A stretch of 64,000 bases of DNA, from positions 96,224,001-96,288,000 of the forward strand of contig NC_043005.1 in NCBI RefSeq assembly GCF_006345805.1, written 5' to 3'. Of this stretch, positions 3,117 to 64,000 are shown piece after piece. The translations under genes and the position numbers were made by a program. Under the pieces are notes generated by a model. That model saw only the letters and a list, made by a program, of their open reading frames with translations, was not told the origin of the DNA and did not search any database. The DNA comes from Octopus sinensis (lineage: Eukaryota). Numbering within the stretch: the first letter of the stretch is position 1; every line of letters starts with the position of its first letter.

Positions 3117-3582
3117 TATCATCATCATTGTTTAACGTTCGCTTTCCATGCTAGCATGGGTTGGACGACGTGACTGAGGGCTGGCGAGCCAGACGGCTGC
3201 ACCAGGCTCCAATCTAGATCTGGCAGAGTTTCTACAGCTGGATGCCCTTCCTAACGCCAACCACTCCGAGAGTGGTATATATATATATATTCACACATAT
3301 ATATTTTAATTTTCAATAGTTTTCTAAACTGCTTACATCAAATTTCACTCACAAGGTCTGAAACCACCCAGGGCTATGTTAGAAGACACTTGCTTGAGGT
3401 ATCACACAGTGGGAATGAACCCTGGACAATGTGGTTGTAAAATGAACTTCTTAACCTCCCACACAGTGAAGCCTGCCAAGACAAAGTCTGTCATGATGCC
3501 TTAATGGCCCTACAGCTCAGAGGATGATTCATCAATGTTAAATATCCGTTAAAGCTTTCCTTTCAGACAATATAAATCTTAC

Positions 3583-7688: not shown

Positions 7689-7723
<35 letters not shown>

Positions 7724-8392
7724 TCATAGTTTAACATCTGTTTTCCATGCTAGCATGGGTTGGACGGTTTGACCGGGGTCTGGAAAGCCAGGAGGCTACA
7801 CCAGGCTCCAGTCTGATCTGACAGTGTTTCTACAGCTGGATGCCCTTCCCAACACCAACCACTCCGTAAGTGTAGTGGGTGCTTTTTACGTGCCACCGGA
7901 TCAGGGGCCAGAGGAGGCTGGTAACATCCATGATCGGCTGGTGCTTTTTACGACAGGTTTCTTTACATTTCTGTCGACCAAATCCACTCAAAAGGATTTG
8001 GTCAGCCCAGGGTTATAGTAGAAGGTACTTGCCTACAGTGCTGTGCAGTGGAACTAAACTCTGCAAGCTTCTTAAGCACACAGCCATGTCCATGCATATA
8101 TAAGGGATGAGCAAAGGATAGAAACATTGGTGAGAAATCTACAAATCCATTGCATTTCTCATAATGAAATAAGATGGGACTCAAGCCTAACTTTTGTTGT
8201 AACTTCATCTCCCAGAATATTTTCTTTAATCTGCTTTTATCATAAGTATCAAAAGACAATGCAAACCTTTCTGGTTACTTATAAAGAAATAAAGAAAGAA
8301 AGAAAATAACCACAGAAATAAGGTGTAAATGGTGAGAAAGAAAAGAATGCAGGTAACAATGAAGGAAAGATTTTCTGTTAATACATATATAC

Positions 8393-11357: not shown

Positions 11358-13161
11358 CTGGAAACAGAAATGAAAGATAGTGTTGCTTTTAAGAAACTGA
11401 GATATATTAAATATTGATTTCAAAATTTTGGCACACGGCCAGCAATTCCAAGGGAGGGCATTATTTTATCAACTGGCACTATTTTATCAACCCTTAAAGA
11501 ATGAAAGGCAAAGTCGACCTCGGTGGAATTTGAACTCAGAATGTAAAGACAGATGAAATGCTGTGAAACATTTTGCCCAGTGTGCTAACGATTCTGCCAG
11601 TTTGTTGCCTTGAAGATATATTAAATATTAACTTCAAATTCTGGCGGTGTTTATATGGCTTTAATTAACAAGTACAATTAATCTTGCATTAAAACACATT
11701 TGAAACAACTGCATCAGTAACACTACATTTATGTGTCTGTAAAATTGTTTGTTTATTAAGTCCATATTAGTATACTTAATTCCAGGAGTATTAAAAAAAA
11801 TATCAAATTAAAAATATGTGGCAAGGAAAGGTGAACATTAGCTCAATAGCTAATATTCATCCATTAATCTTCTACACCCAATATTCCTGGGAAGGTCATG
11901 GAGGTAGAATACTCAGACACCTCCTCCATAGGGTCCAATCAGAAGCAGCCATCCTTAGACTTTCCAACTGGATTCCAAAGTGTGACAAACTGAGACTAAA
12001 GATATTAAACAACCATTTTTTTTAGGTCTACCTGCCAGATTTTGTGGATCAAATATGAATATACCGGCATGCTGCCAGGCATAAATAAGACCACCAAAAA
12101 TTTCAATATGGAAAGGATTTGACAGAACAATCAAAGCACATCTTCTGCTGCATAATCTAACAAGGGACACATTTAGATTTTAGGTAGAAGAATCCATTTG
12201 AAAAATACATTGCAGCCTCCACCCAATGCCAGTACAACCAGCAATAAACCGGCAACTTGTTCTGGGAGGTATGTGGTGAGAACATAAAAGATGTCTCTCA
12301 GGACCCCAAAGTGGGTCCCAGAGGCAACAACTGTTCAATGACTAGTAATAATTTGTCAAGTACAGGAGATAACTCTTTTTAATATCAATTTTAGTCTTAT
12401 TAGATTTCCTCAATAAGACAAATCCTTCACTGTACCTGCTGAAGGACTAATGAAAGAATCACTAAATACACAATTAGTATATTTTAAAAATATACAGTTG
12501 CAGATATGAGTGTATAGTTAACAAGCTCACTTGACAGCTACATGATTTGGGATTTAATCCCAGTGTGAGGCACCTAAGGCAGCAAATGTCTTCTATTATA
12601 GCCCTGGGCTGACCAATGCCCTGTGAGTGGATCTGATAGATGAATACCAAAAGAAACACTTTGGGTATATATGTGTGTGTGTGTGTGTGTGTGGACGCGT
12701 CTATGTGTTTCTGTTTCCTTGCCTTGATATTTGTAAACGAGTATCACTGTCATGCAAGTGGTGTCCTTTGTTTCCAATCTTCCCTGAAAACATGTCTGGT
12801 CAAGGAAATGTAGTGCGTAGCCATTTTTGAATAATAGCGCCAATTTGTGGTAGCTGGCAATATGACGTAATGTCATATTGACGAAGAAATATGATTGTCG
12901 TTTTTCCATTGGTTAATATAACTGCTCATATAGGAATTCTAAGAATTAGTTAAAGAATATTTTTATGTGATTTTGATTCTTTAAAGTCAAGTTGAGCAGT
13001 TATAAAAACCCTGGATTTTGGGAAAAAACTTCAGTGTTTGTTGGAGAAATATTACCTTACTTGGAAACGGGGAAGAAAATTTGCTTCAACAAATCCTGCC
13101 TGACCCATTATATCATAGAAAAGTGGACATAAAAAAAGAAAAATGTTAAGAGAAAACTTAC

Positions 13162-13274: not shown

Positions 13275-13996
13275 CTGTAACGACAAATATAAAACAGTCA
13301 ATACTTCAGTAAGTGTTTGCTTGTTGATAAATGTTGATCATTGCAATTTTATATAAATATTGTACATGTGTGTTATGTGCCTGTATCAGTGTTGTTTAAA
13401 TGAGTGCATACTTATGAATATAGCTAGTGTATGAGTGTGTGTGGAATTACTTTAAATAATTTAACTTATGAGCCAAAAAAATATATATATATATCCAGAT
13501 ACACCTTATATATACACAGTCCCCATGCCGGTGGCACATAAAAAGCACCATCCGAACATGGCCAATTCCAGCGCCGCCTTGACTGGCTCCCATGCTGGTG
13601 GCATGTAAATAGCACCATCCAATCATTGTCAATGCCAGCCAGGCCCCTGTGCCAGTGGAACGTAAAAAAAGCACCTACTACACTCTCAGAGTGGTTGATG
13701 ATAGGAAGGACATCCAGCTGTAGAAACACTGCCTGATCAGACTGGAGCCTGGTGCAGCCTCTTGGTTTCCCAGACCCCAGTCGAACTGTCCAACCCATGC
13801 CAGCATGGAAAACAGACGTTAATCAATGATGATGATGAAAATATATATACAGATATACACACCTATATACACACAGAATTTATATAACTGTAGTAATAAA
13901 ACTTATTTACTAATTAATGAGACATCATCATCATCGTTTAATGTCCGTTTTCCATGCTAGCATGGGTATAGATTAATTAATTTAACATATACTTAC

Positions 13997-15644: not shown

Positions 15645-16080
15645 ATCATCATCATTTACTGCCTGCTTTCCATGTTGGCATAGGTTAGATGGTTTGACCA
15701 GAACTGGTAAGCCACAGAGCTGCACCAAATTCCAGTCTGGTTTGGCATGGTTTCTATGGCTGGATGCCCTTCCTAACACCAACCACTCCAAGAGTGTAAT
15801 GGGTGCTTGTATGTGCCACCAGCACAGATGCCGGTTACGTGATACCAGCATCAGCCACGACTGTGATTTCACTTAGCGTGATGAGTCTTCTCATGCACAG
15901 CACATCACCAAAGGTCTCAGTCACTTATCATCACCTCCATGAGGTCCAACATTCAAAGATCATGCTTCAGCACCTCGTCCCATGTCTTTCTGGGTCTACC
16001 TCTTTCACAGGTTCCCTCCACAGTTAGAGATTGGCCCTTCTTTACACAGCTGTCCTCTTCAGCCACAATTACAATTTCAC
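15645..16080 (-). mobile_element. 5'-truncated RTE LINE (ORF2 end + 3' UTR)
   Basis: EDSCVKKGQSLTVEGTCERGRPRKTWDEVLKHDL followed by the common tail. Confidence 0.88.
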
Positions 16081-16725
16081 TTAGCTTGACAGGTCTCCTC
16101 AAATGATGATGACAAATGGTGAGAGTAGTGACGGCCAGAATCTTTAGAGCGTCAGACACAATGTCTTGCATTATTTCTTCTGACTCTTTATTTTCTAGGT
16201 TCAAATCCTGCCATGGTCAAGGTCAACTGTACCTTTCATTTTTTTTTTTTTTGGTGATGGTGATAGTGGAGAGAAATTAAATAAAGTACCAGTCATGTAC
16301 TAGGGTTGCTGGTATTGACTAGACCCCTTCCCATCAAAACTGCAACATTTGTGCCTAAATTCGAAACAATTATTTAATTTACTAATAATGGTTTCTTATT
16401 TACAAAATGTTCCAAATATGTCAAGGGGATGTTAAACTTATTCGAAAAGCATGGAATGTACAACAACATCAACAATAGCTATGAGATACTTTTTCTATGG
16501 CTGGGAGAGGGAGAAGAAACATTATGGCTAAAATTTCAGTGTATTTGTAGTTACTTTTCTTTGAAAGGAATGGATGACCCTTGTTCATTTTTATGTCCAC
16601 TTTTTAATGCAAGCATAGATTAGATGAATACAAGTTGAGGCCTTGTTTTTACAGCTGGATGCCTTCCTGTTATTAACCATTTCATGTTTCTTTGAATTTG
16701 CACAGTAGAAATAATTGTAACTTAC

Positions 16726-17873: not shown

Positions 17874-17955
17874 TTCATACATTTGACGATTGACTGATAA
17901 CACATTGGAAAGGACTTGAAGTGCCTTTATTCTGATTTCTGTACGGATTTCATGG
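17874..17955 (-). CDS. TSC2: TSC2 exon (human exon 14 equivalent): HEIRTEIRIKALQVLSNVLSVNRQMYE
   Basis: tttcag/gtaggt borders, 82 nt. Matches [27 protein letters not shown]. Confidence 0.96.
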
Positions 17956-19210
17956 CTGAAATATAAGTTTCAAAAATTAAAATTACTTTATTAAAACTAA
18001 TAATTTATGTGCAAAGTTAAACATGAGTGTGAAAAACAGGCTAAACATTAAAGGCATTAACCAATGAGTGGAATAAAGATAACTGCACTGGTTTGGGAAT
18101 GTTTAGCCCTAGGGTAACTCCTGTTCAAGCAGCTCTTTAGATCAAAGGCATCCCAGCTGTGACTATCACCATCTATTTAGTGGTATCATCATCATCATCA
18201 TCGTCGTTTAACGTCCGTTCTCCATGCTAGCATGGGTTGGACGGTTCGACCGGGGTTCTGGGAAGCCAGAAGGCTGCACCAGGCTCCAGTCTAATTTGGC
18301 AATGTTTCTACAGCTGGATGCCCTTCCTAACGCCAACCACTCCGTGAGTGTAGTGGGGGCTTTTTACGTGCTTTATCCAGGACATTATTTAATGTGGCCT
18401 TTTGTTTTTTAAAAAATGGCATGATGTGATTTGGAGGAGATTCAGTTGCCTTTTCTATGCTCCCTTATGGTTTGTGGGGTGGTGGACATGTAATGTGAAT
18501 ACGAAGTGGAACAAGTATTAGAAAGGTATCTGTTAGAGTAGTAAATCACTCAAGGAAGACTTAAGAAATGTTCGGGGCAGATAGAAGAATGCTGTGATTT
18601 ACAAATGAAAAGATGTGCAATTCAGACAAATGGCGATATGAGGTTGTTGTTGTTTTTTAGCCTCAGGACTATCCTGATCTAGCTAATCTAAGACCACAGA
18701 TTTGACCTTTCCAGCTTTGACCACTCCATTTTATTTTCAGATACAATGTATCCAGGACTACATTATCCAATATGTTCGTCTTTAGACAGCAGAGTGTCAT
18801 CTGAGAGTAATTTGGCTGCTATTTCTAGCAGATCGAGTGACCATAAAGAAGGTCCTTCATTGAATTTGTGGAAAATGTTTGCAACAGCTTTCTATTATCA
18901 GCATTTCCAAAATATGTGGCTGGTCCTACTGTGTGAGTAATCTAACAAATGGCTGTTCAGCTGTCATATATTGAAATTGATAGGCAAAAATCTAACATAT
19001 ATATATATATATAAATGGATGAATGAATTATCCTTTGTTTACCGTTAACATGGAAAATTCAATAAACCGTTACCAGGGTAGCAAAATTCACGCAAGTAAC
19101 AAGGATGTAGCGACCTATTCAAAGGTAGAAACTCCAGGTGAATGTGGAGTAATTTGTGTAGTATAAGTAAATAAATGCAGTTGAACGCAGGTGTTATTCA
19201 AATTCTTTTA

Positions 19211-19294
19211 CTTTCGACATGTTTCGAAGACGACATTGATTTTATTCCAAAGGAATAAACAGTGTAAAATAATGTGATCTTCTCATCAGGAAAG
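19211..19294 (-). ncRNA. Type I hammerhead ribozyme motif (Penelope/retrozyme-type minimal stem III, long stem II)
   Basis: Minus strand reads CUUUC-CUGAUGA-GAAGA[47 nt]UCUUC-GAAA-C-AU-G-UC-GAAAG. Features: 5-bp stem I, intact CUGANGA and GAAA core, G10.1-C11.1 pair, palindromic ACAUGU stem III, GUC cleavage triplet. Confidence 0.85.
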
Positions 19295-19369
19295 AAAGAG
19301 AACCCATCTCAAAAACAAGACGTTATAACAACTTTGATGACTGCATAAATGATAAACAGAACGCTATTA

Positions 19370-20653
19370 CGTTCAATAAGTAATGCCTCTGACCCACTTG
19401 CAGTTGTTTGATCTAGCTGAAATTTTGCATGTGCAATCATTTATATCTCTATAGAGTAAGTGGCAAATTACAGCTCTGAATTAATTATGGTTTCTGATTT
19501 ACAGGTGTTTGGACCGAGTCAAGTGTGAAATGGAGCCTGTTGAGTGTCGAGCAGTGATCCGGTTTTTGTATTTGAAAGGACGCACACCACGGGAGACTTT
19601 TGATGAAATGAAAGTAACTTATGGTGATGATGCCCCATTATATGACCTTGTAAAACGCTGGCATCGTGAATTCAAACATGGTCGGAACTCTGTGGAAACA
19701 GCTCCCAGATCTGGTCGTCCCCTTCTGCCATTGATGAGGCATCTGTCCGTCAAGTTGAGGCTGCCATTTTGGAAGATCGACGCATAATTATTCGCTAAAT
19801 AGCCCATGAGGTCAAGATTAGTACCGGGTCTGTGGAAACTATGATTCATGACCATTTGCATATGCAAAAGGTGTCTGCCAGATGGATTCCCAGGTTGCTC
19901 ACACCTTTCCAGAAGCAAGAACGCGTCGAGTGCTTGAGGGTGAATTTGGAGATGTGCCAAGAAGATGAGTCAAAATTTTTCAAAAGACTGATTACACAGG
20001 ATGAAACCTGAGTCCATCACGATGATCCAGAGACCAAAGCCCAGTCAATGCAGTGGAAGCACCGTGACTCACCCCCTCCAAAGAAGGCAAGGGTGCAGCC
20101 CTCCGCTAGCAAGGTCATGCTCACAGTCTTCTGGGACCAGGATGGAGTAGTGATGACAGATTTCCTGGCAAAGGGTACCACAATTGCAGGAGCCTATTAT
20201 GCTTCACTTTTGAGGAAATTAAGAGAAGTTATCAAAATCAAGAAGCGGGGCAAGATCAGCAAAGGCATCCTCCTCCTGCAGGATAACGCTCCAGTCCACA
20301 ACTCGCTTGTCGCCAGATCAGAAGCACAGGCGTATGGCTATGAACTCCTCCCCATCCCCCCTACTTTCCTGACCTTGCACCCTCTGATTTTCACCTCTTC
20401 CCAATCATGAAGTTGTTTTTGAAAGGAAAGCGTTTCCCAGATGATGCAGCCTTGATTTCTGAAGTCACGTTGAGGTTGGAGGACCAAGCTGGGTTCTTCT
20501 ACAAAAACAGTCTCCAGAGCCACATCAAACGATGGGAGAAATGCCTAACTCTGGGTGGTTCCTATGTAGAAAAAGACTAATAACTGTGCCAAGTTTCGTT
20601 GCTCTACTGCTATGGGAAGTGGGTCAGGGGCATTACTTATTGAACGCCCCTCG
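19370..20653 (+). mobile_element. Decayed near-full-length mariner transposon (DD34D, irritans-like TIR)
   Basis: Right TIR (reverse complement cgaggggcgttcaataagtaatgcccctgacccactt) is followed by TA. The left TIR cgttcaataagtaatgcctctgacccactt lacks the first 7 nt. About 1.28 kb long. Subfamily assignment is from recalled TIR similarity. Confidence 0.95.
19530..20580 (+). pseudogene. Mariner transposase pseudogene
   Basis: HTH region MEPVECRAVIRFL, WIPRLL, catalytic TQDET / QDNAP / YFPDLAPSD motifs, C-terminus RWEKCLTLGGSYVEKD*. Disrupted by frameshifts near 19725 and 20355 and stops at 19796-19798 and 20009-20011. Confidence 0.94.
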
Positions 20654-21712
20654 TATATATATGAGTAGCACTTGTTTAGTTTAATTTTACTTATTTCTTT
20701 TATAGTATAGTCCCACCCATGCTAGCATGGAAGGCATATGTTAAACGATGATGATGATGACGACGACAATGGTGGTGGTGGTGGTTATGATGATGATGAA
20801 AGTAAAGACCCCGTGTTTTTTCATGTTGGTATAGCTTGATGGGTCTGTTGAGTCTGCAATACCTGTCATATCTCTGCAATCCCAGAGGGAAGCTAAATGC
20901 TGATAACAGAAAATTGTTGCAGACATTTGTCATAAACTCAATAACCAACATACCACAGGATTTTCTGTTAGGGTTCCCCATTTCTTGGGTTAGTAGCTTT
21001 TCCTACCACCTTGGTAGACTAATTAGAAACTTCTAAGATCTCATGCACACACACCACCACCACCAGCATCCTCCTCCTCCCCCTCATCATCATGATTTAA
21101 AGTCTGCCTACCTATTTTTTTACTACCCACAAGAGGCTAAACACTGAGAGGACAAACAAGGACAGACAAACAGATTAAGTCGATTACATCGACCCCAGTG
21201 CGTAACTGGTACTTAATTTATCGACCCTGAAAGGATGAAAGGCAAAGTCGACCTCGGCGGAATTTGAACTCAGAACATAACGGCAGACAAAATACAGCTA
21301 TGCATTTCACCCGGCGTGCTAACGATTCTGCCAGCTCACCACCTTTTATAAACATTATCATCATCATCATCAAACATCTGTATTCCATACAGGCATGGGT
21401 TTGATGGTTTGACAGGATCCAACAGGCTAGAAGACTCGCTGAGCTTCAATGTCTGTTTTGACATGGTTTTTATGACTTGATACCATTCCTAATAACAATC
21501 ACTTCACAGTGTGTACTGAGTGCTTTTTTCGTATCACTAGCACTAGTGAGGTCACCAGGTAACTTGCAAGACAAGGCCCTTGATTGAGGTGAGGAAATGC
21601 AGTATTGAGGCAGGTGGCTTTGTGCCAGGTGTTGAGAGATAAGAGTATGTTAGAAGGGTAGAAAACAGGTGTCTCACTGTAGAAGAAATACATGGCTTAG
21701 AAAAAAAAATAC

Positions 21713-21816
21713 CTAAAATATTTCTCTAAAAGTTGCTGAAGGTTTTCTATCCAATTCTCTTCTCCAGGATGTAGACTTTCAGCTGTATGATCTATCAAAG
21801 ATATTACAGATGCTGC
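21713..21816 (-). CDS. TSC2: TSC2 exon (human exon 13 equivalent): AASVISLIDHTAESLHPGEENWIENLQQLLEKYF(S)
   Basis: ttgcag/gtattt borders, 104 nt. Matches [34 protein letters not shown]. Confidence 0.96.
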
Positions 21817-27371: not shown

Positions 27372-27723
27372 CAACGACAAACACACACACACACACATCA
27401 TCATCATTTAACATCTGCTTTCCATGCTAGCATGGGTTGGATGATTTGATTGAGGACTGGCGAACCAGATGGCTGCACCAAATCCACTCATAAGGCTTTG
27501 GTTGGCCTGAGGCTATAGCAGAAGACACTTGCTCAATGTGCCATGCAGTGGGACTGAACATGGAACCATGTAGTTGGGAAGCAAGGTTCTTACCACACAG
27601 CCACGCCTGTGAGCTACATGTTCCATTTACAAATGTCGACATGCTATATTTACTGATATATAAATGAACACATTAAGTTGAAAATAAAAAGTAAACAAAG
27701 CGAAAACAAAAAAACATATTTAC

Positions 27724-28214: not shown

Positions 28215-28970
28215 CCAATATTCTAATTATGTCAATAATAATAATCCTTTCTACTACAGGCACAAGGCCTGAAATTCTAGGGAAGGAGCTAAATCAATTA
28301 CATCAACCCCAATACTCAACTGGTACTTCATTTATCGACCCTGAAAGGATGAAAGGCAAAGTCAACCTCGGTGGAATTTGAACTCAGAATGTAAGTACGG
28401 ACAAAATGTCAGCAAGCATTTTGCCCAGCGTGCTAATGATTCTGTCAACTCACCATCTCAAATAATAATAAAAATAATAATCCTTTCTACTATAGACACA
28501 AGGCCTGAAATTTGGGGGGAGGGGAGGCAAAGTGAAATAATAGTAACAATGGTTTCAGATTTTGGCTCAAGTCCAGCAATTTTAAGGGAGGAATAATTCA
28601 ATTGCATCGACCCCAGTGTTGAACTGGTACTTATTTTATTGACCTTGAAAGGATAAAAGGCAAAGTTGACCTCAGCTGCATTTGAACACAGAATGTAAAG
28701 AGTAATCAAATGCTACTATGTATTTTGTCTGACATGCTAACGATTCGGCCAGTTCACTGCTTTTAATAATAATAATTATAGGGGGAGGGACTAGTCAATC
28801 ACCTCGACTCCAGTGTTTCACTCATACTTAATTTATCAACTCCGAAAGGATGAAAGGCAAAGTTGACCTCGATGGAATTTCAACTCAAAATGTAAAGACA
28901 GACGAAATGCCACTAAGCATTTTGCCCAGTATGCTAACAATTCTGCCAGCTTGCCCACCTTAATAATAAT
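28215..28970 (-). repeat. Head-to-tail array of 3-4 family B SINE copies separated by (AAT)n
   Basis: tttatcgacc..gaaaggatgaaaggcaaagt.gacctc..tggaattt.aactc recurs at about 28330, 28635 and 28830. aataataat spacers lie at about 28215-28240, 28460, 28765 and 28960. Confidence 0.85.
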
Positions 28971-32049: not shown

Positions 32050-32740
32050 CTCCTCATCATTATTTTTTAACATCCATTTTCCATGCTGGCATGGGCGGTT
32101 CGACTGGGGTCTGGGAAGCCAGGAGGCCGCACCAGGCTCCAGTCTGATATGGCAGTGTTTCTGCAGCTGGATGCCCTTCCTAACGCCAACCACTCCGAGA
32201 GTGTAGTGGGTGCTTTTTATGTGCCACCGGCACAGGGGCCAGAGTGGGCTGGCATTGACCACGATCAGACGGTCCTTTTTATGTGCCACTGGCACAGAAG
32301 CCAGTCAAGGTTGGGGTGGCATCAGCCACATTTGTATGGTGCTTTTTACATGCCACCGGCACAGAGACCACAACTACAATTGTCATTTGATTGTGGTTTG
32401 ATTTGATTTTGATTTGATATACTTGACTCAATAGGTCTCCTCAAGTACAGCAGGTCGCCCTACAATGCAAAGGTACTTTTTGAGTGGGCTGGTTATGCGA
32501 CACTGGTGTAGGTTACAGCTGTGAACTCACTTTATTTGCCAGGTCTTGTCAGTCACAGCATATCTCCAGAGGTCTTGATCTTTTGTCATTGCCTCTGTGA
32601 GGCCCAACGTTAGAAGGTCATGCTTCCCCACCTCATCCCATGTCTTTATGAGTCTCCCTCTACCCCAGATTCCTTCCACTGTTTGGGAATGGCACTTCTT
32701 CACACAGCTCTCCTCATCCATCCGTAGTACATAACCATAC
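32050..32740 (-). mobile_element. 5'-truncated RTE LINE: ORF2 C-terminus + 3' UTR VNTR + (GAT)n tail
   Basis: ORF 32527-32721 (MDEESCVKKC..GRGRLIKTWDEVGKHDL..TEAMTKDQDLWRYAV) is continuous with GTGCCGGTGGCAC modules and the common tail. Confidence 0.9.
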
Positions 32741-33427
32741 CATATTTAGCTATTTCAATCATATTTAGCTATTTCAATGTGATCAGTGTAATTGAAGTTC
32801 TTACTCTTTGTCAGTCTGTCAAAGAATCTACTACACTTTGCATGCAACTCTTGTATTAATCATACATTCTATACCAACTGCTTCTATCCTTTCTACATTC
32901 AAAGTAGAGCCATTTTTCTGATGCACATTGCCATGCGTGGCTTCTGCTGTCTGTTACCTCCATCTTTGCCCTGTTTAACTTCTGGGTTTTTGACTCAAAA
33001 CATATTCTTTTAAGCTTCAAACTTCTTTAATGGGTCTTTTGTAAATTTTGCAACAAAAACTAGATTCCTGTCATACAGAAATTCTCATGAGTATCCAAGT
33101 TCATAACTCTTTTATTATGGTCACAAAGAATATAAGGAAAACCATTAAGAAGTGCTTTCATGTAAATTTAATTCTTTACTATGGCTACTGTCAATTCTCA
33201 TTCAACTTTCTGACCTCTCATCCAAAACTTGAAGTATTTCTATTTCCATAAGCCAGTCATTCATTCATAGTTAGCTTTCCCATTGTCCTGCATACTACAA
33301 CAAACAACATCAAACTATGAAAAAAGTATTTTTCTAATTCAACAAATGCTACATCCATACTGTTTGATTGTTTTACAAAGTACGTTTAGATAAATAAATG
33401 AAATAACAAGTTAGCTTTTTATCTTAC

Positions 33428-35204: not shown

Positions 35205-35985
35205 AAAGAGCACCATGCGAGTGTGATCGTTGACAGAGTGGCTAACCGGCTTCCGTGCCAATGACACATAAATGGCACCATTCGAGTGTGATCGTTACCA
35301 GCGTCACCTTACTGGCACTTGTGCCCGTGCTAGTAGGGTGCCAAGAGTACCATCCGATCATGATTGTTGCCAGAGCGGCTAACTGGCTTCCGTGCCGGTG
35401 GCATGTAAAAGGCACCATTCGAGCGTGATCATTACCAGCATCGCCTTACTGGCACTTGTGTCCGTGCTAGTAGGGTGCCAAGAGTACCCTCCGAGCATGA
35501 TTGTTGCCAGAGCGGCTAACTGGCTTCCGTGCCGGTGGTATGTAAGAGGCACCATTTGAGCGGGATCGTTACCAGCGTTTGTCGCCTTACTGGCACTTGT
35601 GCCCGTGCTAGTAGGGTGCCAAGAGTACCATCCAAGCATGATTGTTGCCAGAGCGGCTAACTGGCTTCCATACCAGTGGCATGTAAAAGGCACCATTCGA
35701 GCGTGATCATTACCAACGTCGCCTTACTGGCACCTGTGCCGGTGGCATGTGTAAAAAGATTCGAGCGAGGTCGTTGCCAGTACCGCCTGTCTGGCCCCCG
35801 TGCCGGTGGCATGTAAAAAGCACGCACTACACTCTTGGAGTGGTTGGCGTTAGGAAGCACATTCAGCTGTAGAAATTCTGCCAGATCAAGATTGGAGCCT
35901 GGTGCAGCCATCTGGTTCGCTAGCCCTCAGTCAAAATCATCCAACCCATGCTAGCATGGAAAGCGGACATTAAACGATGATGATG

Positions 35986-35987
<2 letters not shown>
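35205..35987 (+). mobile_element. RTE 3'-UTR copy with expanded VNTR (about 3.5 units of about 137 bp) and (GAT)n tail abutting (TA)n
   Basis: ccaagagtac recurs at 35341, 35478 and 35619. Constant tail ...ctgtagaaa..tgccagatcaagattggagcctggtgcagcc..ccatgctagcatggaaagcggacattaaacgatgatgat. Confidence 0.88.
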
Positions 35988-37127: not shown

Positions 37128-37405
37128 CGGCACAGTCATGCCTTTGGTTGTCAGAAGTGAAAGTAGTCAACTTCGTGTATTTCCGTCAGGTTTATACCTT
37201 CGTTAATTTACGCCGTTTATTTATGTACCACCACACTGTTAGGTTTATAAAACAATTGAAGTTCAGTTTAAAGTTTATAAATAAATACATTTCATGTGTA
37301 ATGTATACACATGTGTATATATATATATATATATATGTATACACATGTATATATACACATGTATATATATATATATATATGTATACACATGTATATATAC
37401 ACATG

Positions 37406-37445
<40 letters not shown>

Positions 37446-37518
37446 TATATATATATACACATGTATATATACACATGTATATATATATATATATATGTAT
37501 ACACATGTATATATACAC

Positions 37519-37556
<38 letters not shown>

Positions 37557-37558
37557 AC

Positions 37559-37593
<35 letters not shown>

Positions 37594-37596
37594 CAC

Positions 37597-37633
<37 letters not shown>

Positions 37634-38085
37634 CACATGTATAGACACATCTTTAATTAAACTATTGACCGCCTTAAAACGGATTTCAACAGAAAAATAT
37701 TACTATAATGGATAATATAAGCATATAACTACTTATACACACATACAATAAATACAGACGCACACACATTAGTCAGACATATAGCCACATATACACACAC
37801 ACACACGTGTGTATGATTGGTGTATGTGATCGCGGTGGTGGTGGTCATTTGTGCAGATTTGGTGTGATTTCTTTTTTAAAAACAATAATGCAAGAATATA
37901 TTTATTTATAAAGTTTAAACAGAACATGGAATGAAATGTATTTATTTATAAACTTTAAACTGAACTTCAATTGTTTTATAAACCTAACAGCGTGGTGGTA
38001 CGTAAATTAACGAAGGTATAAACCTGACGGAAATACACGAAGTTGACTACTTTCACTTCTGACAACCAAAGGCATGACTGTGCCG
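37128..38085. mobile_element. Foldback-type element with about 155-bp terminal inverted repeats and an internal TA/ACATGT minisatellite
   Basis: 37128-37295 is the reverse complement of 37931-38085 apart from a 13-nt insertion and a few substitutions. No TSD or ORF recognised. Confidence 0.85.
37300..37650. repeat. (TA)n interleaved with about 13 TACACATGTA units
   Basis: Seen directly. This is the source of the IYIY/YTHV pseudo-ORFs. Confidence 0.97.
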
Positions 38086-42700: not shown

Positions 42701-43119
42701 CCAATGTCCCACTTTTAAGGTAGTAGAGTTTAATTTGGGGGAGATTCGGCTATTTCTAGTGAGTTGGGTGACCATGTAGAGATTCGTTTGAAGAATTGGG
42801 ATAACTGGATAAGATCAGTATAGTTAGAGTTTGGTATTAAGAATTGTTAAATACAAACACAGGTAAAGGAAAAGGTTTTCATCACAGAGAAAAAGGCTTC
42901 AAGGAAGTTGTTACCATTATTGAGTAACTCTGTCCAACCTTCAACAAGCAGACCTACAACATGTAAGTAATTTAGTTGAACAACTGAATGTAATCAACAG
43001 ATCCAGTTATATAATGGTAAAACTTAGTTGATGTCATTTTCACTACTGTCCAATCTGTTCTCGCTGGCAGGTTCTCATAATGGTCACAGTGGAGAAGGAG
43101 AAAGTGGATTTTAATTTCT

Positions 43120-43345
43120 TTATTGCCCACAAGGGGCTAAACATAGAGAGGACAAACAAGGACAGACAAAGGGAATACGTCGATTACATCGACCCCAATG
43201 CGTGACTTGTACTTAATTTATCGACCCCGAAAGGATGAAAGGTAAAGTCGACCACGGTAGAATTCGAACTCAGAACGTAATGGCAGGCGAAATACCGCTA
43301 AGCATTTCGACCGTCGTACTAACGTTTCTGCCAGCTCACCACCCT
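43120..43345 (-). mobile_element. tRNA-derived SINE family B (gagctggcagaa.cgttag head; ctttcatcctttcggggtcgataaattaagtac core, resembling the Meta-SINE domain)
   Basis: Near-complete copies at 21125-21345(-), 43120-43345(-) and 45885-46060(+). More decayed copies at about 11420-11615, 17105-17325, 26930-27090, 49210-49350, 57470-57680 and 58560-58740. The Meta-domain link is from recall. Confidence 0.85.
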
Positions 43346-44740: not shown

Positions 44741-47699
44741 TTAATCAAGTGGTCTGTTGTGATGGGAAATGTATTATTTTGTATTCTTAGTTGTGGAGTT
44801 AAGACAAGACTGATAGAGATAATGTATTGTTTGTACATTAATGCTGCTGTTTCTGTGTTTGCAAAAAAGTGGTGTCTATTGTGAGGTGCTTTGCAAAGTT
44901 CTAAACATATATTTTGTACTCTGTGAACCTACAAGAAATAACAGCCAAATCTTCTTCAAACCACCTCCTACCATATTAAAAAAAAATGGGGGAAAACAAT
45001 GAAAAATTCAAAAAAATCTATATAGAGCAGAGGTCTAGAAACAAGATGCCACAAGGCTGTAGTACATTGTGTTTATATTAAATGGTAGAGTATCAACAAT
45101 GTGAGAGAGGTGGAGACTGATGTAATGGTGTCAGATAAGAGAAACAGACAGAAAGGGAAAGAGAGAGAAACAGCTCTGTTGTATCTTTTATCTTACTTGT
45201 TTCAGTCATTGGATTGTGGCCATGCTGGGGCACTGTCTTGAAGTGTTTAGTTGAACGAATCAACTCCCATACTTATTCTATCAGTCTCTTTCATGGAAAC
45301 CACTAAGTTATGAATGAGGATGTAAACAAGCCAACACCAGTTGTTAGTGGGAGACAAACACAAAGACACACACACACACATGCATGCATACTTACATACA
45401 TACCAAGCATCACACTAATACACCTGCTTGTTCCCTCACCTGCCTTTGTCTTTTGTTTTCTGTACATTTGAACCATATAAGTATGTATGGAGAGCAGACA
45501 TTAAACAATGATGATGATGAAACATATATGTACACACACACAGTGGGTTTCGTTTCTACAATGCTCATCATCAAAATTCATTCACAAGGCACTGATCAAC
45601 CAGGGTCAACAGTAGAAAATACTTGCCCAAGTTAGAATGCAGTGGGACTGAACCTGAAACTACATGGTTGCAAAGTGAGCTTCTTAACCATACAGCCATG
45701 CCTGTGCCTATATTTAATTCAATGTAAATGTTTTATATTCTCAGAGAATTCCATAAGAGCCAGTATTTGGTTCTGGATTCAGAACATCAGGTAGATGAGA
45801 GAGTAATCTCCTTCTGGATAGAAGATCAGTCTTCTACAGCTATTTCCAAATGAATCCTATCTATTTTTAACAGTTAGCCAGTGGCTCTCTGAGCTGGCAG
45901 AATCGTTAGCACGCCGGGCGAAATGCGTAGCTATATTTCATCTGCTGTTATATTCTGAGTTCAAATTCCACCGAGGTTGACTTTGCCTTTCATCCTTTTG
46001 GGGTCGATAAATTAAGTACCAGTTACGCACTGGGGTCAATTACATCGACTTAATCTGTTTGTCTGTCCTTGTTTGTAGCCTCTGTGTTTAGTCCCTTGTG
46101 AGTAGTAAAGAAATAGGTTCTCAAATGGAATAAAGCAATGGATATCTAGGTGCTTTAGAAAATTCCAGATCAATACTTGAGCATCTCAGAAAACCTCCTC
46201 TTGATTGTTTGGTTATACACAAGTATGACTAACTCTTTAGCATTTAGATTACTCTGTAAAATGCAATGTTTATTTATTCACATTGTTTTGAACTGATCAT
46301 GCATTATCTTGCAGCTTCAAAATTTGAACAATGTGATTGTTTATTTCAGAATAACATTGTAGAGTAGCTACAAGAGGTCGTATCTGGCTAGTTTGAACAT
46401 AAAACCAAGGGAATATATTTGAGGTGGATATGGCCAGTTTAAATGTTGAAGAGCTGATTAAACAAGGTAAGCAATAATTTTCTATATTTTTTTCTGATTG
46501 TAAATTTTAAAATATAATCTTGTTTAATTTTACATGTAAAATATACCAGTATATTATTATTTAATCTCCAGTATGTCACAAAACCAAGAAGATTGAAAAC
46601 CACAGAGTTCAGCAAAATGCGAATTCATAATTCATAACTAAGTTAATATCTTATCTGTGCAGTTGTTTTATTTCAACTGCCCATGGGAGACCAATAGTTA
46701 TAGAATGTTGGTGAATAAGGTCTTACTTAACAATCAAATAATTTCTTCAGCATGATCTAGAATGTATTGATTTTGCTATTATTTAACCCTAAGTCAGTTT
46801 TGACAGAGCAAACCTGTGATCCATGCTTTTCTGTTTCTTTCTAGGCATAGTGTATTTTGGATTAAGTTATTCAATGTATACTTTCTTTTTGAAGATAGTA
46901 AAGTTAACTCTGAAGGCAAAGTGGCAGCTATTTGTAGCAGATAAACCATGTTGATGTTCTCTCATTGGCTCATCTAGAACATGCATACATGGTGGACATA
47001 CTGTGCTAGACAAGAAAGCAATACTATGGCATATGATGTACTTGTGCTTCATATAAAGTTAGCAGCAGATTTCTATATCTCTAAACAAGATTCACCTATT
47101 GGTTACTATCCACTAAGTAGGAGGAATAATTCTAAAAGAAGATTAATCATCCACAAGAGGATCTGAACTCAATGATAGGTGTCTGAGCAGTTTGCAATAG
47201 CATTTTATGTTTCCCATGCAAATAAGAGTTGAACAAATGTATAAACACAGACACTGGCATCTGTCCTTGAAATGGATGTTTCTATTACTGAATCTTGTTC
47301 CCAGTGCCAAAATACTCCTTCACAATAAACAACTGCTACCTATCTACCAGCTTAGTAGACTGCCATGAACAGAAATATAATTAAATAAATATAAATTCAA
47401 TATTGTTTCAGTGGTAAGTAAATATTATAAGAGTTACTTAAATTATGACAAAATTTGATTTGCTTAATATTTAAACATGCATAATAAGATGTATCTAGTT
47501 TGCAATTTTTGAAGTGCTTAGTAAAAGGATGGGCACTCAGTTATTGAAACCTTAAAACCATGCCAAAAGGACACAACAAAGATCAGCAGATTTCTCTGTT
47601 ACTGCATGTTTGTCTGATGATGAAGGACTGAGTAAGGTGAAACACTGTGTAACCAATTCCATTACAGAAAAATGACATCAGGAAGAAGAGGTACAAGAA

Positions 47700-58535: not shown

Positions 58536-59025
58536 TCTTCTTCTTCTTATTATTATTATTGCAGTATTTTGCCCGTCGTTATGTTCTGAATTCTAATTCT
58601 GCCAAGGTCAATTTTGCCTTTCATCCTTTCGGGGTCAATAAATTAAAGTACCAGTGAAACACTGGGGTCGATGTGATCAACTGGTCCTCTCTCCCCAAAA
58701 TTAAGGCCTTGTGTCTATAGTAGAAAGGATTATTATTATAGGTGCAGGCATGACTATGTGGTTAAGCAGTTCTCTTCTGACCCACATGCTAGGGGTTCAG
58801 TCTCACTGCAAAGATGTGAATAGCTGGCATGCTATACTACAGTCACAGGTTGACCAATACAGTAACAAAATAGTTAACTGTAGTTAAGCGTTGCAGAATA
58901 AAAAAAACAAATTGTTATTATTTTTTTGAAGCTAAACACAAAGATGGTGTTATTAGGGGAGTATGTCAACCATCTAAGGTGAGCTCTGTTTTAACAATAC
59001 ATAACATAAATGAAGAAACACAAAC

Positions 59026-59112: not shown

Positions 59113-59189
59113 CTGAAATGTCAACGGAAAAGTTTATGTTATCAATGGGGAATATACACTGTCACGGTACACAAATAAATAATATATAT

Positions 59190-59465
59190 AGATACACAGA
59201 GAAATAGATAGGCACACAGGTGGATAAAGAGACAGACAGACAAGTAGACAGACAGACAAGTAGATAGATAGATAGATAGACAGACATAAATAAATAAATA
59301 GACAGCCAGACAGATAGATAAATAAATAGATAGACAGACAGACAGACAAATAGATAGACTGACAGATAAATAGATAGATAGATAGACAAACAGACAGACA
59401 CAAATAAATATGTAGATACAGAGAGAGAGAGAGAGATAGGTAGATAGATAGACAAACAAACAGAC
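59190..59465. repeat. (GATA)/(GACA) compound tetranucleotide repeat
   Basis: Seen directly, about 80 nt upstream of the exon-3 acceptor. Confidence 0.95.
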
Positions 59466-60366
59466 GGATGATTATATAGAAGATGGATATATAGATATAT
59501 ACAGAATGTGTGCGGAAGAATACCAAAGTAAGTGTGGTATAGTCAGGAGGTAGTGCTAAGGTAAATCTGAAGCATAATCTCCCAGTTCCTTCATCTAAGG
59601 CAAAGAACACTGAGTTTTAAGTCAGTTATAAGAACAATTTACATTAAGCAGGTATAAGAAATAAAAAAAGAGAAAAGGCAGATAAACAAAAGTAAGCATA
59701 AGGAGTGTTTCCATGTAAATACAATTCTTAGACATTGTTTAGCCGAGTTCTGTTTTTACATTTAATGTACACCGTGTTCGAGTAAGAGTACATTATGTGT
59801 GTGTACATAATGTACACACAGTGTACATTAAATTTTCACTGGATGAAGTACATTTTCAGTTGATCTAACTATAACAGGACAGTGAACCATACACATACAC
59901 ACATACATGGCCAAAACTTAGAAGTTACTGTCAACAACATTCTTGTATAATAATAAATTTGTACTCTACAGAAGTATAGTGTAAAGTATCAGATTAATGT
60001 AAAACTGTTTTTATTATAACCAAGTATAAAAACAAACATTAATATACACACACATTTAGACATACAAACAAGCAAAACAGGTAAGCAAAAATTCTCAGTA
60101 ATTAAGCTTATTTCTTCATTTGAAGCTAAAATCTTGTTCTCTTGTTACTCTGATGTTGTTCCTCATGTTCTTCAAGGTGATAAGAGATATAGGTTTCCCA
60201 CATAGAAAGAATGTGTTAGTTTGGCTGCCATAATATTGTTGGTTTGGTAGGGCAACCTGGCTAACATTTCTATAATTAATGGTTGTTGCTGGAATTGGTT
60301 TAGCAGCAGCCACTTGCCACTACAAGTAGGATTTTTCTGTCACAGCTGGAGGTAGAATGGGTTTAA

Positions 60367-63190: not shown

Positions 63191-64000
63191 TGCATGGCAA
63201 GCAAATGCTTTAGCTTCATGCATGGTGAATGTTTATTGTTTTACGCATATTTTGCTAGCTACATGTTCAAAGAGAACATTAAATGCATTGATAGCACTGG
63301 TTTTGGTGGGCCTACAAAGGCCATCTCCAAACTATTAATAAAGACAAAAGAAAAAAGAAAATCAATTAAAATTATTTTTCAAAACTTACAAACAAGACAG
63401 CTCCTGGAAAGCCTGTCCTCAGTAGAAAAGCAAGAAGTAGACTGTGAGAGCTGACACTTTACAATGGCAACAGCCTCACATATGATCTTTGCTATCAATT
63501 AAGTAGAATTTGGTGTGATACAGTACCAGACAAGATCAATGACAAATATCAACTCTTTTGATAGCAATCTGCCTGATACTTTCATCATCATCATCATTTA
63601 ATGTCTGCTTTCCATGCTGGCATGGGTTGGAGGGTTTGACTCAAAACTGGTAAACCAGGGAGCTGCACCAGGAGGTTCCAATCTGATTTGGCATGGTTTC
63701 TACAGCTGGATGCCCTTCCTAACACCAACCACTCCAAGAGTGTAGTGGGTGCTTTTTACACACCACCCGCATGGGTTCCATTGAACTGACACCAGCATCA
63801 GCCCCAACTACAAACGCATTTGGCCCAACAGGTCTTCTCAAGCATGGTATATCACCGAAGGTCTCTGTCTCCTGTCACTGCCTCCATGTGGTCCAACACT
63901 CAAATAGTACTTTTTAGGTGCCACCAGCACAGGTGCCCACGACTATGATCTCACTTGGCTTGACAGGTCTTCACAAGGATGGTACCCTGTAACAAATTTC

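What the first reader, a model, noticed from the sequence alone, without database searches (positions are those of the whole stretch)
19211..19294. Intact hammerhead ribozyme on the sense strand of a TSC2 intron, with an atypical 57-nt stem II
Seen: the minus strand reads 5'-CUUUC CUGAUGA GAAGAUCACAUUAUUUUACACUGUUUAUUCCUUUGGAAUAAAAUCAAUGUCGUCUUC GAAA C AU G UC GAAAG-3'. Every invariant core position is present. Stem I is CUUUC/GAAAG. Stem II opens GAAGA/UCUUC and continues through a U-G pair, ACAUU/AAUGU and either AUUUUA/UAAAAU or an inner UUUAUUCC-UUU-GGAAUAAA hairpin. Stem III is the 2-bp + AU palindrome ACAUGU. The predicted cut after GUC falls between 19216 and 19215. Established: minimal type I hammerheads with palindromic stem III occur in Penelope-like element termini and non-LTR retrozymes, and cleave mainly as dimers. 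Intronic ribozymes (CPEB3 HDV-like, amniote intronic hammerheads) can affect host pre-mRNA processing. Inference: the motif is transcribed with every TSC2 pre-mRNA (intron between exons at 21713 and 17955), so it could cut the nascent transcript of this mTORC1 repressor. No second copy was found in this window, so cleavage might need trans-pairing with another hammerhead RNA, which would make it a conditional switch. The long stem II is unlike the short stem II usual in these motifs and could supply tertiary contacts.
Basis: partly seen in the sequence, partly recalled or inferred. Interest (0 to 1): 0.85.

Follow-up and report, generated by a model that had tools for sequence, protein, structure and literature searches.

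The report
Lone hammerhead ribozyme motif in intron
A complete hammerhead self-cleaving RNA motif really does sit on the sense strand of a TSC2 (tuberin) intron, but it is a single copy with almost no third helix, so it is most likely an inactive leftover of a mobile element and not a switch on the gene.

Summary
The minus strand 19294..19211 carries every invariant hammerhead core base, a 5-bp stem I, a 57-nt stem II and the palindrome ACAUGU as stem III. The predicted cut lies between 19216 and 19215. It sits inside a 3,757-nt tuberin (TSC2-like) intron on the gene's strand. Chance is unlikely: shuffles and 2,519 permuted-core decoys give about 0.001-0.003 comparable hits per window without the palindrome and none with it.

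No Rfam hammerhead model matches, even at E<=10. No second copy, even a degenerate one, exists in the 64 kb. Stem III cannot close in a monomer, and the lowest-energy fold pairs core bases into an inactive rod. The stems fold equally well on the antisense strand, so they give no RNA-level evidence. The motif lies in a roughly 350-nt, 34% GC segment bracketed by (TA)n runs, later hit by a mariner.

The best reading is a solo relic of a Penelope-like-element or retrozyme-type hammerhead, near-inert as a monomer. The TSC2 "conditional switch" idea has no support. Published work reports that such hammerheads are undetectable as monomers and weak as dimers, and that slow intronic hammerheads do not block splicing. 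I could not reach other cephalopod genomes, so copy number, covariation and orthologous retention remain untested.

The parts
19211..19294 (-). Type I hammerhead motif. Stem I is 19294-19290 / 19215-19211. Core CUGAUGA is 19289-19283. Stem II is 19282-19226. GAA is 19225-19223. The stem III palindrome ACAUGU is 19222-19217. C17 is 19216, so the predicted cut is 19216|19215.
   Evidence: Sequence read. Descriptor scan gives a single hit. Coordinates checked. Chance controls.
19226..19282 (-). Extended 57-nt stem II hairpin with about 19 bp: 6 bp, a C/C mismatch, 5 bp, an 11x3 internal loop, then 8 bp with a UUU loop.
   Evidence: MFE is -12.5 kcal/mol, z = -3.54, and 0 of 200 shuffles fold as well. 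Pair probabilities in 284 nt of native context are above 0.9.
19201..19304 (.). 104-nt imperfect inverted repeat that holds the motif. Stem I extends to 13 bp with two 1x1 mismatches (GGUUCU.UU.CUUUC / GAAAG.AA.AGAAUU). It folds equally well on either strand.
   Evidence: The hammerhead strand gives -21.3 kcal/mol (z = -1.8) and the antisense strand gives -23.5 kcal/mol (z = -2.6).
19018..19367 (-). Putative ~350-nt host segment of the motif (34% GC), lying between two (TA)n runs. It is a possible solo unit of a non-autonomous retroelement. It has no other copy in the window and no coding similarity.
   Evidence: (fold z = -2.0). The boundaries are inferred, not shown.
18996..19017 (.). (TA)n microsatellite directly downstream of the segment on the minus strand.
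20654..20662 (.). Short TATATATAT run 7 nt beyond the right end of the mariner. It is the likely other half of the (TA)n target.
   Evidence: 2.1% of window positions are bracketed by (TA)n runs within 300 nt on each side. This is suggestive only.
19370..20646 (+). Degenerate mariner/Mos1-type DNA transposon with 30-nt terminal inverted repeats (97% complementary). It inserted 76 bp from the 5' end of the motif, is not part of it, and arrived later.
   Evidence: Inverted repeat I4. Pfam HTH_48 and Transposase_1 match the ORF fragments.
21713..21816 (-). Upstream tuberin (TSC2-like) exon, followed by donor GT at 21712-21711.
   Evidence: (DUF3384).
17874..17955 (-). Downstream tuberin exon, preceded by acceptor AG at 17957-17956. 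The frame is kept across the junction. The intron is 3,757 nt.

Best explanation
The motif is a solo relic copy of a hammerhead-bearing retroelement sequence. It is of the kind carried in the pseudo-LTRs of Penelope-like elements and in the non-LTR retrozymes derived from them.

Inferred history: a roughly 350-nt AT-rich unit was inserted into a (TA)n microsatellite inside a tuberin/TSC2 intron, by chance in the sense orientation. A mariner transposon later landed 76 bp away.

Shown: the hammerhead core and stems I and II are intact at the sequence level.

Inferred from structure modelling and published behaviour of the class: such hammerheads cleave only when two copies build a shared helix III from their palindromic loops. 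This copy has no partner in cis, only a 1-2-bp stem III, no loop-loop tertiary contacts, and a competing fold that pairs core bases. It is therefore expected to be essentially inactive in the pre-mRNA, to be removed with the intron, and to have no role in TSC2 regulation.
For: - All invariant positions are present, together with natural-hammerhead preferences that my descriptor did not require: G10.1-C11.1, C17 and a palindromic 15.2-16.2/loop 3 (criteria from PMC4209133).
- Chance expectation is about 1e-3 per window without the palindrome and 0 of 400 shuffles or 0 of 2,519 decoys with it.
- 54 chance matches to the core strings in metagenomes all lack the stems.
- The helix III form, one A-U pair capped by the palindromic tetraloop CAUG, is the one described for amphibian retrozyme hammerheads, which work as dimers (PMC7229834).
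- Helix I of 5 bp and an enlarged helix II match the trend of PLE min-hammerheads.
- The host segment is about 350 nt and 34% GC. This fits the size (~300 bp monomers) and GC (<45%) of metazoan retrozyme units.
- The segment is bracketed by (TA)n, a preferred target of some PLE clades (PMC8557442).
- It is a single copy.
- The inactive fold is favoured by 1.6 kcal/mol and the palindrome duplex is only -4.6 kcal/mol.
- Published monomers of this class are inactive and dimers are weak.
- Intronic copies are common.
- Cephalopod genomes carry hammerheads and Penelope elements (PMC6962438).
Against: - No other copy of the segment or the motif could be obtained, so descent from a repeat family is inferred, not shown.
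- No PLE reverse transcriptase or endonuclease ORF was found next to it: the one upstream ORF I scanned (20703-21002) had no Pfam match, and the segment itself has no protein similarity. The rest of the window was not scanned for these domains.
- The unpaired base between A9 and 10.1, typical of PLE min-hammerheads, is absent.
- A 57-nt stem II lies outside the published range of 4-8 bp.
- No Rfam hammerhead model matches, even at E<=10.
- The stems fold as well or better on the antisense strand, so they give no RNA-specific signal.
- The (TA)n bracket was noticed after the fact, 2% of positions share it, and the mariner's right end lacks a clean TA duplication.
Confidence: 0.6

Rival explanations
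1. Chance motif. The region is simply a 104-nt imperfect DNA inverted repeat in an AT-rich intron. Its internal loops happen to spell CUGAUGA and GAAAC..GUC. It has no hammerhead ancestry and no activity.
For: - The hairpin folds as well or better on the antisense strand (z = -2.6 against -1.8). The stems therefore need no RNA-level explanation.
- No Rfam hit.
- No second copy in the window.
- A 57-nt stem II is unlike known families.
- At roughly 1e-4 or less per 64-kb window (my extrapolation), a multi-gigabase genome would still hold a few chance matches, and the scan looked at many windows.
Against: - The per-window expectation is about 1e-3 without the palindrome and nil with it, in 400 shuffles and 2,519 decoys.
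- The motif also has G10.1-C11.1, C17 and the palindromic stem III that natural metazoan hammerheads prefer. By my base-composition estimate these lower the chance odds by a further 10-30-fold.
- True hammerhead repeats number in the hundreds to thousands in comparable genomes.
Confidence: 0.25
2. The motif is a working intronic ribozyme that cuts nascent TSC2 pre-mRNA, perhaps only when a second hammerhead RNA pairs in trans. It would act as a conditional switch on an mTORC1 repressor.
For: - The core is intact and on the sense strand inside the intron.
- Stems I and II are predicted with probability above 0.9 in native context.
- From my own knowledge, conserved intronic ribozymes exist in other lineages (CPEB3, amniote HH9/HH10).
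Against: - There is no cis partner in 64 kb.
- The trans duplex is only 6 bp and -4.6 kcal/mol.
- The favoured fold sequesters core bases.
- No loop-loop contacts are possible, because stem II has 19 bp and only 1x1 mismatches near the core.
- Motifs of this class show no monomer activity and low dimer activity in vitro.
- Slow intronic hammerheads did not impair splicing.
- There is no conservation evidence.
- A mariner landed 76 bp away, and the site shows no sign of constraint.
Confidence: 0.04
3. The motif is part of a still-active retrozyme or PLE locus whose partner copy was separated or destroyed by the mariner insertion, or lies outside the window.
For: - PLE and retrozyme hammerheads normally occur in tandem.
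- The mariner interrupts the sequence 76 bp upstream.
Against: - With the mariner removed in silico, the flanks show no repeat of the unit.
- No half-motif with up to 3 mismatches exists anywhere in the 64 kb.
- The short TA run just beyond the mariner suggests the unit ends there.
Confidence: 0.05

Closest known systems
Hammerheads of Penelope-like elements: min-HHRs and small palindromic-helix-III variants (Cervera & de la Pena 2014, PMC4209133)
   Same: Type I topology. Helix I of 4-5 bp. An enlarged helix II. G10.1-C11.1. Palindromic 15.2-16.2/loop 3 that implies dimer-only activity. Possible (TA)n target.
   Different: No unpaired base between A9 and 10.1. Helix II is 19 bp in 57 nt instead of 6-8 bp. 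No pseudo-LTR, RT or EN ORF, or tandem partner nearby. Family copies not seen.
Type I hammerheads of metazoan non-LTR retrozymes, such as the axolotl and newt satellite HHR_Amex1 (PMC7229834)
   Same: Helix III is a single A-U pair capped by a palindromic tetraloop. The host unit is about 330-350 nt and AT-rich. Published copies are weak as monomers and efficient as dimers. Dispersed monomer copies, often intronic, are reported (bioRxiv 10.64898/2026.07.22.740005).
   Different: Canonical retrozyme hammerheads have a 6-bp helix I and a 4-bp helix II with conserved loop 1-loop 2 contacts, and they sit in tandem arrays. Here helix II is very long, no loop contacts are evident, and the copy is solitary.
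Conserved intronic self-cleaving ribozymes: amniote HH9/HH10 hammerheads and the CPEB3 HDV-like ribozyme
   Same: A self-cleaving-ribozyme motif on the sense strand of an intron of a protein-coding gene.
   Different: From my own knowledge, those have stable helices, cleave as monomers and are conserved across orthologous introns. Here helix III is unstable, Rfam HH9/HH10 do not match, and conservation could not be tested.

Membership tests
Hammerhead ribozyme (general) | Conserved core: C3 U4 G5 A6 N7 G8 A9, G12 A13 A14, A15.1-U16.1, H17 | tested here: met
   CUGAUGA ... GAA A...U C is read directly.
Hammerhead ribozyme (general) | Three helices around the core | tested here: inconclusive
   Helix I (5 bp, extendable to 13) and helix II (about 19 bp) are predicted with probability above 0.9. 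Helix III is only A-U plus C-G around a 2-nt loop and cannot close in a monomer. It would need a second copy.
Hammerhead ribozyme (general) | Match to a curated covariance model (Rfam hammerhead families) | tested here: not met
   No hit at gathering score on the window. No hammerhead family at E<=10 on 18900-19600. The 57-nt stem II and the minimal stem III probably explain this.
Hammerhead ribozyme (general) | Site-specific self-cleavage after H17 | not testable with these tools
   This needs in vitro transcription and cleavage assays.
Hammerhead ribozyme (natural, fast-cleaving) | Loop 1-loop 2 tertiary contacts between helices I and II | tested here: not met
   Helix II runs 6 bp, a 1x1 mismatch, 5 bp and beyond. 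Helix I has only 1x1 mismatches. No loops sit at the canonical 4-6 bp distance.
PLE-associated hammerheads (PMC4209133) | Short helix I (4-5 bp), G10.1-C11.1, palindromic 15.2-16.2/loop 3 | tested here: met
   Criteria quoted.
PLE-associated hammerheads (PMC4209133) | Unpaired nucleotide between A9 and 10.1, and helix II of about 6-8 bp | tested here: not met
   G10.1 follows A9 directly. Helix II has about 19 bp in 57 nt.
PLE-associated hammerheads (PMC4209133) | Location in a pseudo-LTR flanking an RT/GIY-YIG ORF, usually in tandem | tested here: not met
   The one upstream ORF scanned (20703-21002) has no Pfam match, and the segment itself has no protein similarity. No second copy in 64 kb. 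The wider window was not scanned for RT or EN domains.
PLE-associated hammerheads / retrozymes | Many genomic copies forming consensus families with covariation | not testable with these tools
   No cephalopod or other host genome could be reached. Metagenome and viral scans found none. Protein-index routes found none.
Metazoan non-LTR retrozyme (PMC7229834) | Tandem repeats (at least a dimer) of ~300-bp AT-rich units, each with a type I hammerhead | tested here: not met
   The unit size (~350 nt) and GC (34%) fit, but only one unit is present.
Conserved intronic ribozymes (HH9/HH10, CPEB3 type) | Retention in the orthologous intron across species, and monomeric activity | not testable with these tools
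   Orthologous loci could not be retrieved. Rfam HH9/HH10 do not match.

The most novel reading that the evidence does not exclude
The motif represents a lineage-specific hammerhead variant. Its very long, mismatch-punctuated helix II and extended helix I would replace the usual loop-loop contacts and allow cleavage as a monomer, or with abundant trans hammerhead RNAs from the same repeat family. It would be retained in the TSC2 intron because it tunes the output of this mTORC1 repressor.
Probability: 0.03. Interest if true: 0.75.

Novelty: new member of a known kind. Interest (0 to 1): 0.25.

Why it matters
If the best reading is right, this is one more dispersed hammerhead relic of the Penelope/retrozyme world in an invertebrate intron. 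It is useful for repeat annotation, and it reminds us that Rfam models miss hammerheads with long helix II and minimal helix III. It is not a regulatory discovery.

It would matter only under two conditions. The first is that the long-helix-II architecture proves to be a recurrent, active family. The second is that the site proves to be conserved and cleaved in TSC2 pre-mRNA. That would give a ribozyme input into mTORC1 control. Nothing found here points that way.

Tried and rejected
- Rfam at gathering score and at E<=10 gave no hammerhead. The weak snoRNA and miRNA hits (E 0.4-10) are noise.
- I looked for other copies in the window with blastn at word size 9 and with half-motif searches allowing up to 3 mismatches. 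There were none.
- I tested whether the motif belongs to the adjacent mariner. It lies 76 bp outside the terminal inverted repeat.
- I tested whether it sits at the centre of a larger foldback after removing the mariner in silico. Only a 48-nt inverted pair (18859-18906 / 20895-20942) flanks it, with no extended symmetry.
- I tried to reach orthologous or paralogous cephalopod DNA four ways:
  - Concatenated tuberin exons against the protein index found nothing at E<=1e-10. That threshold may have been too strict for exon-sized hits.
  - A six-frame pseudo-protein of the 350-nt segment found nothing at E<=0.1.
  - Exact look-ups of four window ORFs found none on record.
  - The strict DNA pattern found 0 matches in metagenome and viral contigs.
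- A looser core pattern gave 54 metagenome matches without stems, which I used as a negative control.
- There is no tRNA-like SINE head nearby.
- The supplement of PMC7229834 has no cephalopod data.
- Lunse et al. 2017 (PMC5785218) is not held.

Full report

Yes. The minus strand from 19294 to 19211 reads CUUUC CUGAUGA [57 nt] GAA ACAUGU C GAAAG. A descriptor scan of both strands of the window returns this site and no other. The descriptor was CUGANGA, a stem II closed by at least 3 pairs, GAAA, A15.1...U16.1, H17, and a stem I of at least 4 pairs.

The parts map as follows:
- stem I: 19294-19290 with 19215-19211
- core: 19289-19283
- stem II: 19282-19226
- G12-A14: 19225-19223
- ACAUGU: 19222-19217
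- C17: 19216

The host-gene claim also holds.
- Exon 21816-21713 ends at a GT donor. An AG acceptor precedes exon 17955-17874. The reading frame runs through the junction.
- The upstream exon, scanned together with two further upstream exon fragments, matches Pfam DUF3384, which I know as the tuberin N-terminal domain.
- The intron is 3,757 nt. The motif lies 2,418 nt from the donor and 1,255 nt from the acceptor, on the gene's strand.
- I could not verify the organism.

**2. Is it more than chance?**

- Four hundred dinucleotide-preserving shuffles of the window give 0.055 matches for the loose descriptor. They give 0.0025 for stem I>=5 plus stem II>=5, and none when stem III must be a palindrome.
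- Shuffles destroy native inverted repeats, so I also ran 2,519 decoy descriptors on the real sequence. Each decoy used a permuted CUGAUGA and GAAA. They gave 0.0008 hits per decoy, and none with the palindrome.
- The 57-nt stem II alone folds at -12.5 kcal/mol with z = -3.5.
- A scan of metagenome contigs for the bare core strings (CTGATGAG, 35-65 nt, CGAAACATGTCG) returned 54 sites. None combined a closed stem II with a stem I. This shows what chance matches look like.
- The motif also carries G10.1-C11.1, C17 and the palindromic 15.2-16.2/loop 3. The literature lists these as hallmarks of genuine metazoan hammerheads (PMC4209133).
- Extrapolating from these figures, a multi-gigabase genome would still be expected to hold a few chance matches. 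Chance is therefore unlikely but not excluded.

**3. What surrounds it?**

- A degenerate mariner/Mos1 transposon lies 76 bp upstream on the minus strand. Its 30-nt inverted termini are at 19370-19399 and 20617-20646, and its ORF fragments match HTH_48 and Transposase_1. The motif is outside it.
- With the mariner removed in silico, the motif sits in a roughly 350-nt, 34% GC segment (19018-19367). This segment is bounded by (TA)n at 18996-19017 and by TATATATAT at 20654-20662. Only 2.1% of window positions are bracketed this way. I noticed the bracket after the fact, and the right end of the mariner is untidy.
- The segment has no other copy in the window, no tRNA-like head and no protein similarity.
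- It folds with z = -2.0.
- No second hammerhead half-site exists in the 64 kb, even with three mismatches.

**4. Can it work?**

- In 284 nt of native context, stems I and II form with probability above 0.9. Stem I extends to 13 bp with two 1x1 mismatches.
- Stem III is one or two pairs around a 2-4-nt loop and cannot close in a monomer.
- The minimum-free-energy structure instead pairs A6-U7-G8 with the C-A-U of stem III. It is 1.6 kcal/mol more stable than the cleavage-competent fold.
- The palindrome ACAUGU could build a shared helix III with a second copy. That duplex is worth only -4.6 kcal/mol, and no partner is in cis.
- Stems I and II offer only 1x1 mismatches near the core, not the loops that give natural hammerheads their tertiary contacts.
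- The whole 104-nt hairpin folds as well or better on the antisense strand (z = -2.6 against -1.8). The stems are therefore a DNA-level inverted repeat and give no strand-specific evidence of RNA selection.

**5. Comparison with what is known**

- Metazoan type I hammerheads with a 1-2-bp helix III capped by a small palindromic loop are the norm in Penelope-like elements and in non-LTR retrozymes. They cleave as dimers formed between tandem copies (PMC4209133; PMC7229834; PMC6765202).
- PLE versions have a short helix I and an enlarged helix II. They show no detectable monomer cleavage and low dimer cleavage in vitro.
- The axolotl HHR_Amex1 has the helix III seen here, one pair capped by a palindromic tetraloop. 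It is weak as a monomer.
- Retrozyme units are about 300 bp and AT-rich. They are proposed to be non-autonomous derivatives of PLE pseudo-LTRs. Their monomers are dispersed, and 42-44% of Xenopus copies lie in introns (bioRxiv 10.64898/2026.07.22.740005).
- Some PLE clades prefer (TA)n targets (PMC8557442).
- Cephalopod genomes carry Penelope elements, and one carries 235 Rfam hammerhead loci (PMC6962438).

This motif departs from those families in several ways:
- It lacks the unpaired base before 10.1.
- Its helix II is far longer than any described.
- It has no adjacent PLE ORF and no tandem partner.
- No Rfam model scores it.

**6. Verdict**

The most likely account is a solitary relic of a hammerhead-bearing retroelement unit (confidence about 0.6). 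It would have been inserted into a (TA)n tract of the intron and be catalytically near-silent for want of a helix III partner.

A chance motif inside an inverted repeat remains a real rival (about 0.25).

It also faces the published finding that a slow hammerhead in an intron leaves splicing intact (Dye et al. 2006, as described in PMC2995048).

The tests that would settle the matter are genomic copy number, stem covariation, orthologous retention and cleavage assays. I could not run them because no host or related genome was reachable with these tools.

Noticed in passing
window 19370-20646 (+): A degenerate mariner/Mos1-type transposon with 30-nt terminal inverted repeats (97% complementary). 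Its transposase is broken into several ORF fragments that match HTH_48 and Transposase_1. The left flank ends in TA, but the right terminus is followed by CCCCTCG before a TA run, so there is no clean TA duplication.
   Followed up: partly
window 21110-21345; also 45890-46118, 43114-43343, 28290-28455, 28591-28961, 58558-58682, 11471-11600 and others: An interspersed repeat family of about 230 nt (SINE-like) with at least 10 copies at 78-90% identity in the window, on both strands.
   Followed up: no
window 20710-20760; also 1580-1629, 3118-3166, 7720-7765, 13788-13838, 18186-18242, 27396-27441, 35940-35987, 63582-63631: A second short repeat module of about 50 nt, with translations such as ...PTHASME.GR in one frame. 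Many copies abut microsatellites of the (TA)n or (GAT)n/(ATC)n type. It looks like the end of a SINE with variable microsatellite tails.
   Followed up: no
window 18859-18906 and 20895-20942: A 48-nt inverted repeat pair (83% complementary) flanks the hammerhead segment plus the mariner. With the mariner removed it is roughly symmetric about the motif. No further symmetry or other copies were found, and its meaning is unknown.
   Followed up: partly
window 15956-16216 (-) and 32530-32745 (-): ORF fragments ending in ...GRPRKTWDEVLKHDL / ...GRGRLIKTWDEVGKHDL look like C-terminal remnants of a non-LTR (LINE) reverse-transcriptase ORF. This rests on my recollection and was not tested.
   Followed up: no
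window 37195-37700 and 59137-59616: Long compound microsatellite or low-complexity tracts, (TA)n/(TATG)n-like and (CT)n-rich, fill several hundred bases of other introns.
   Followed up: no
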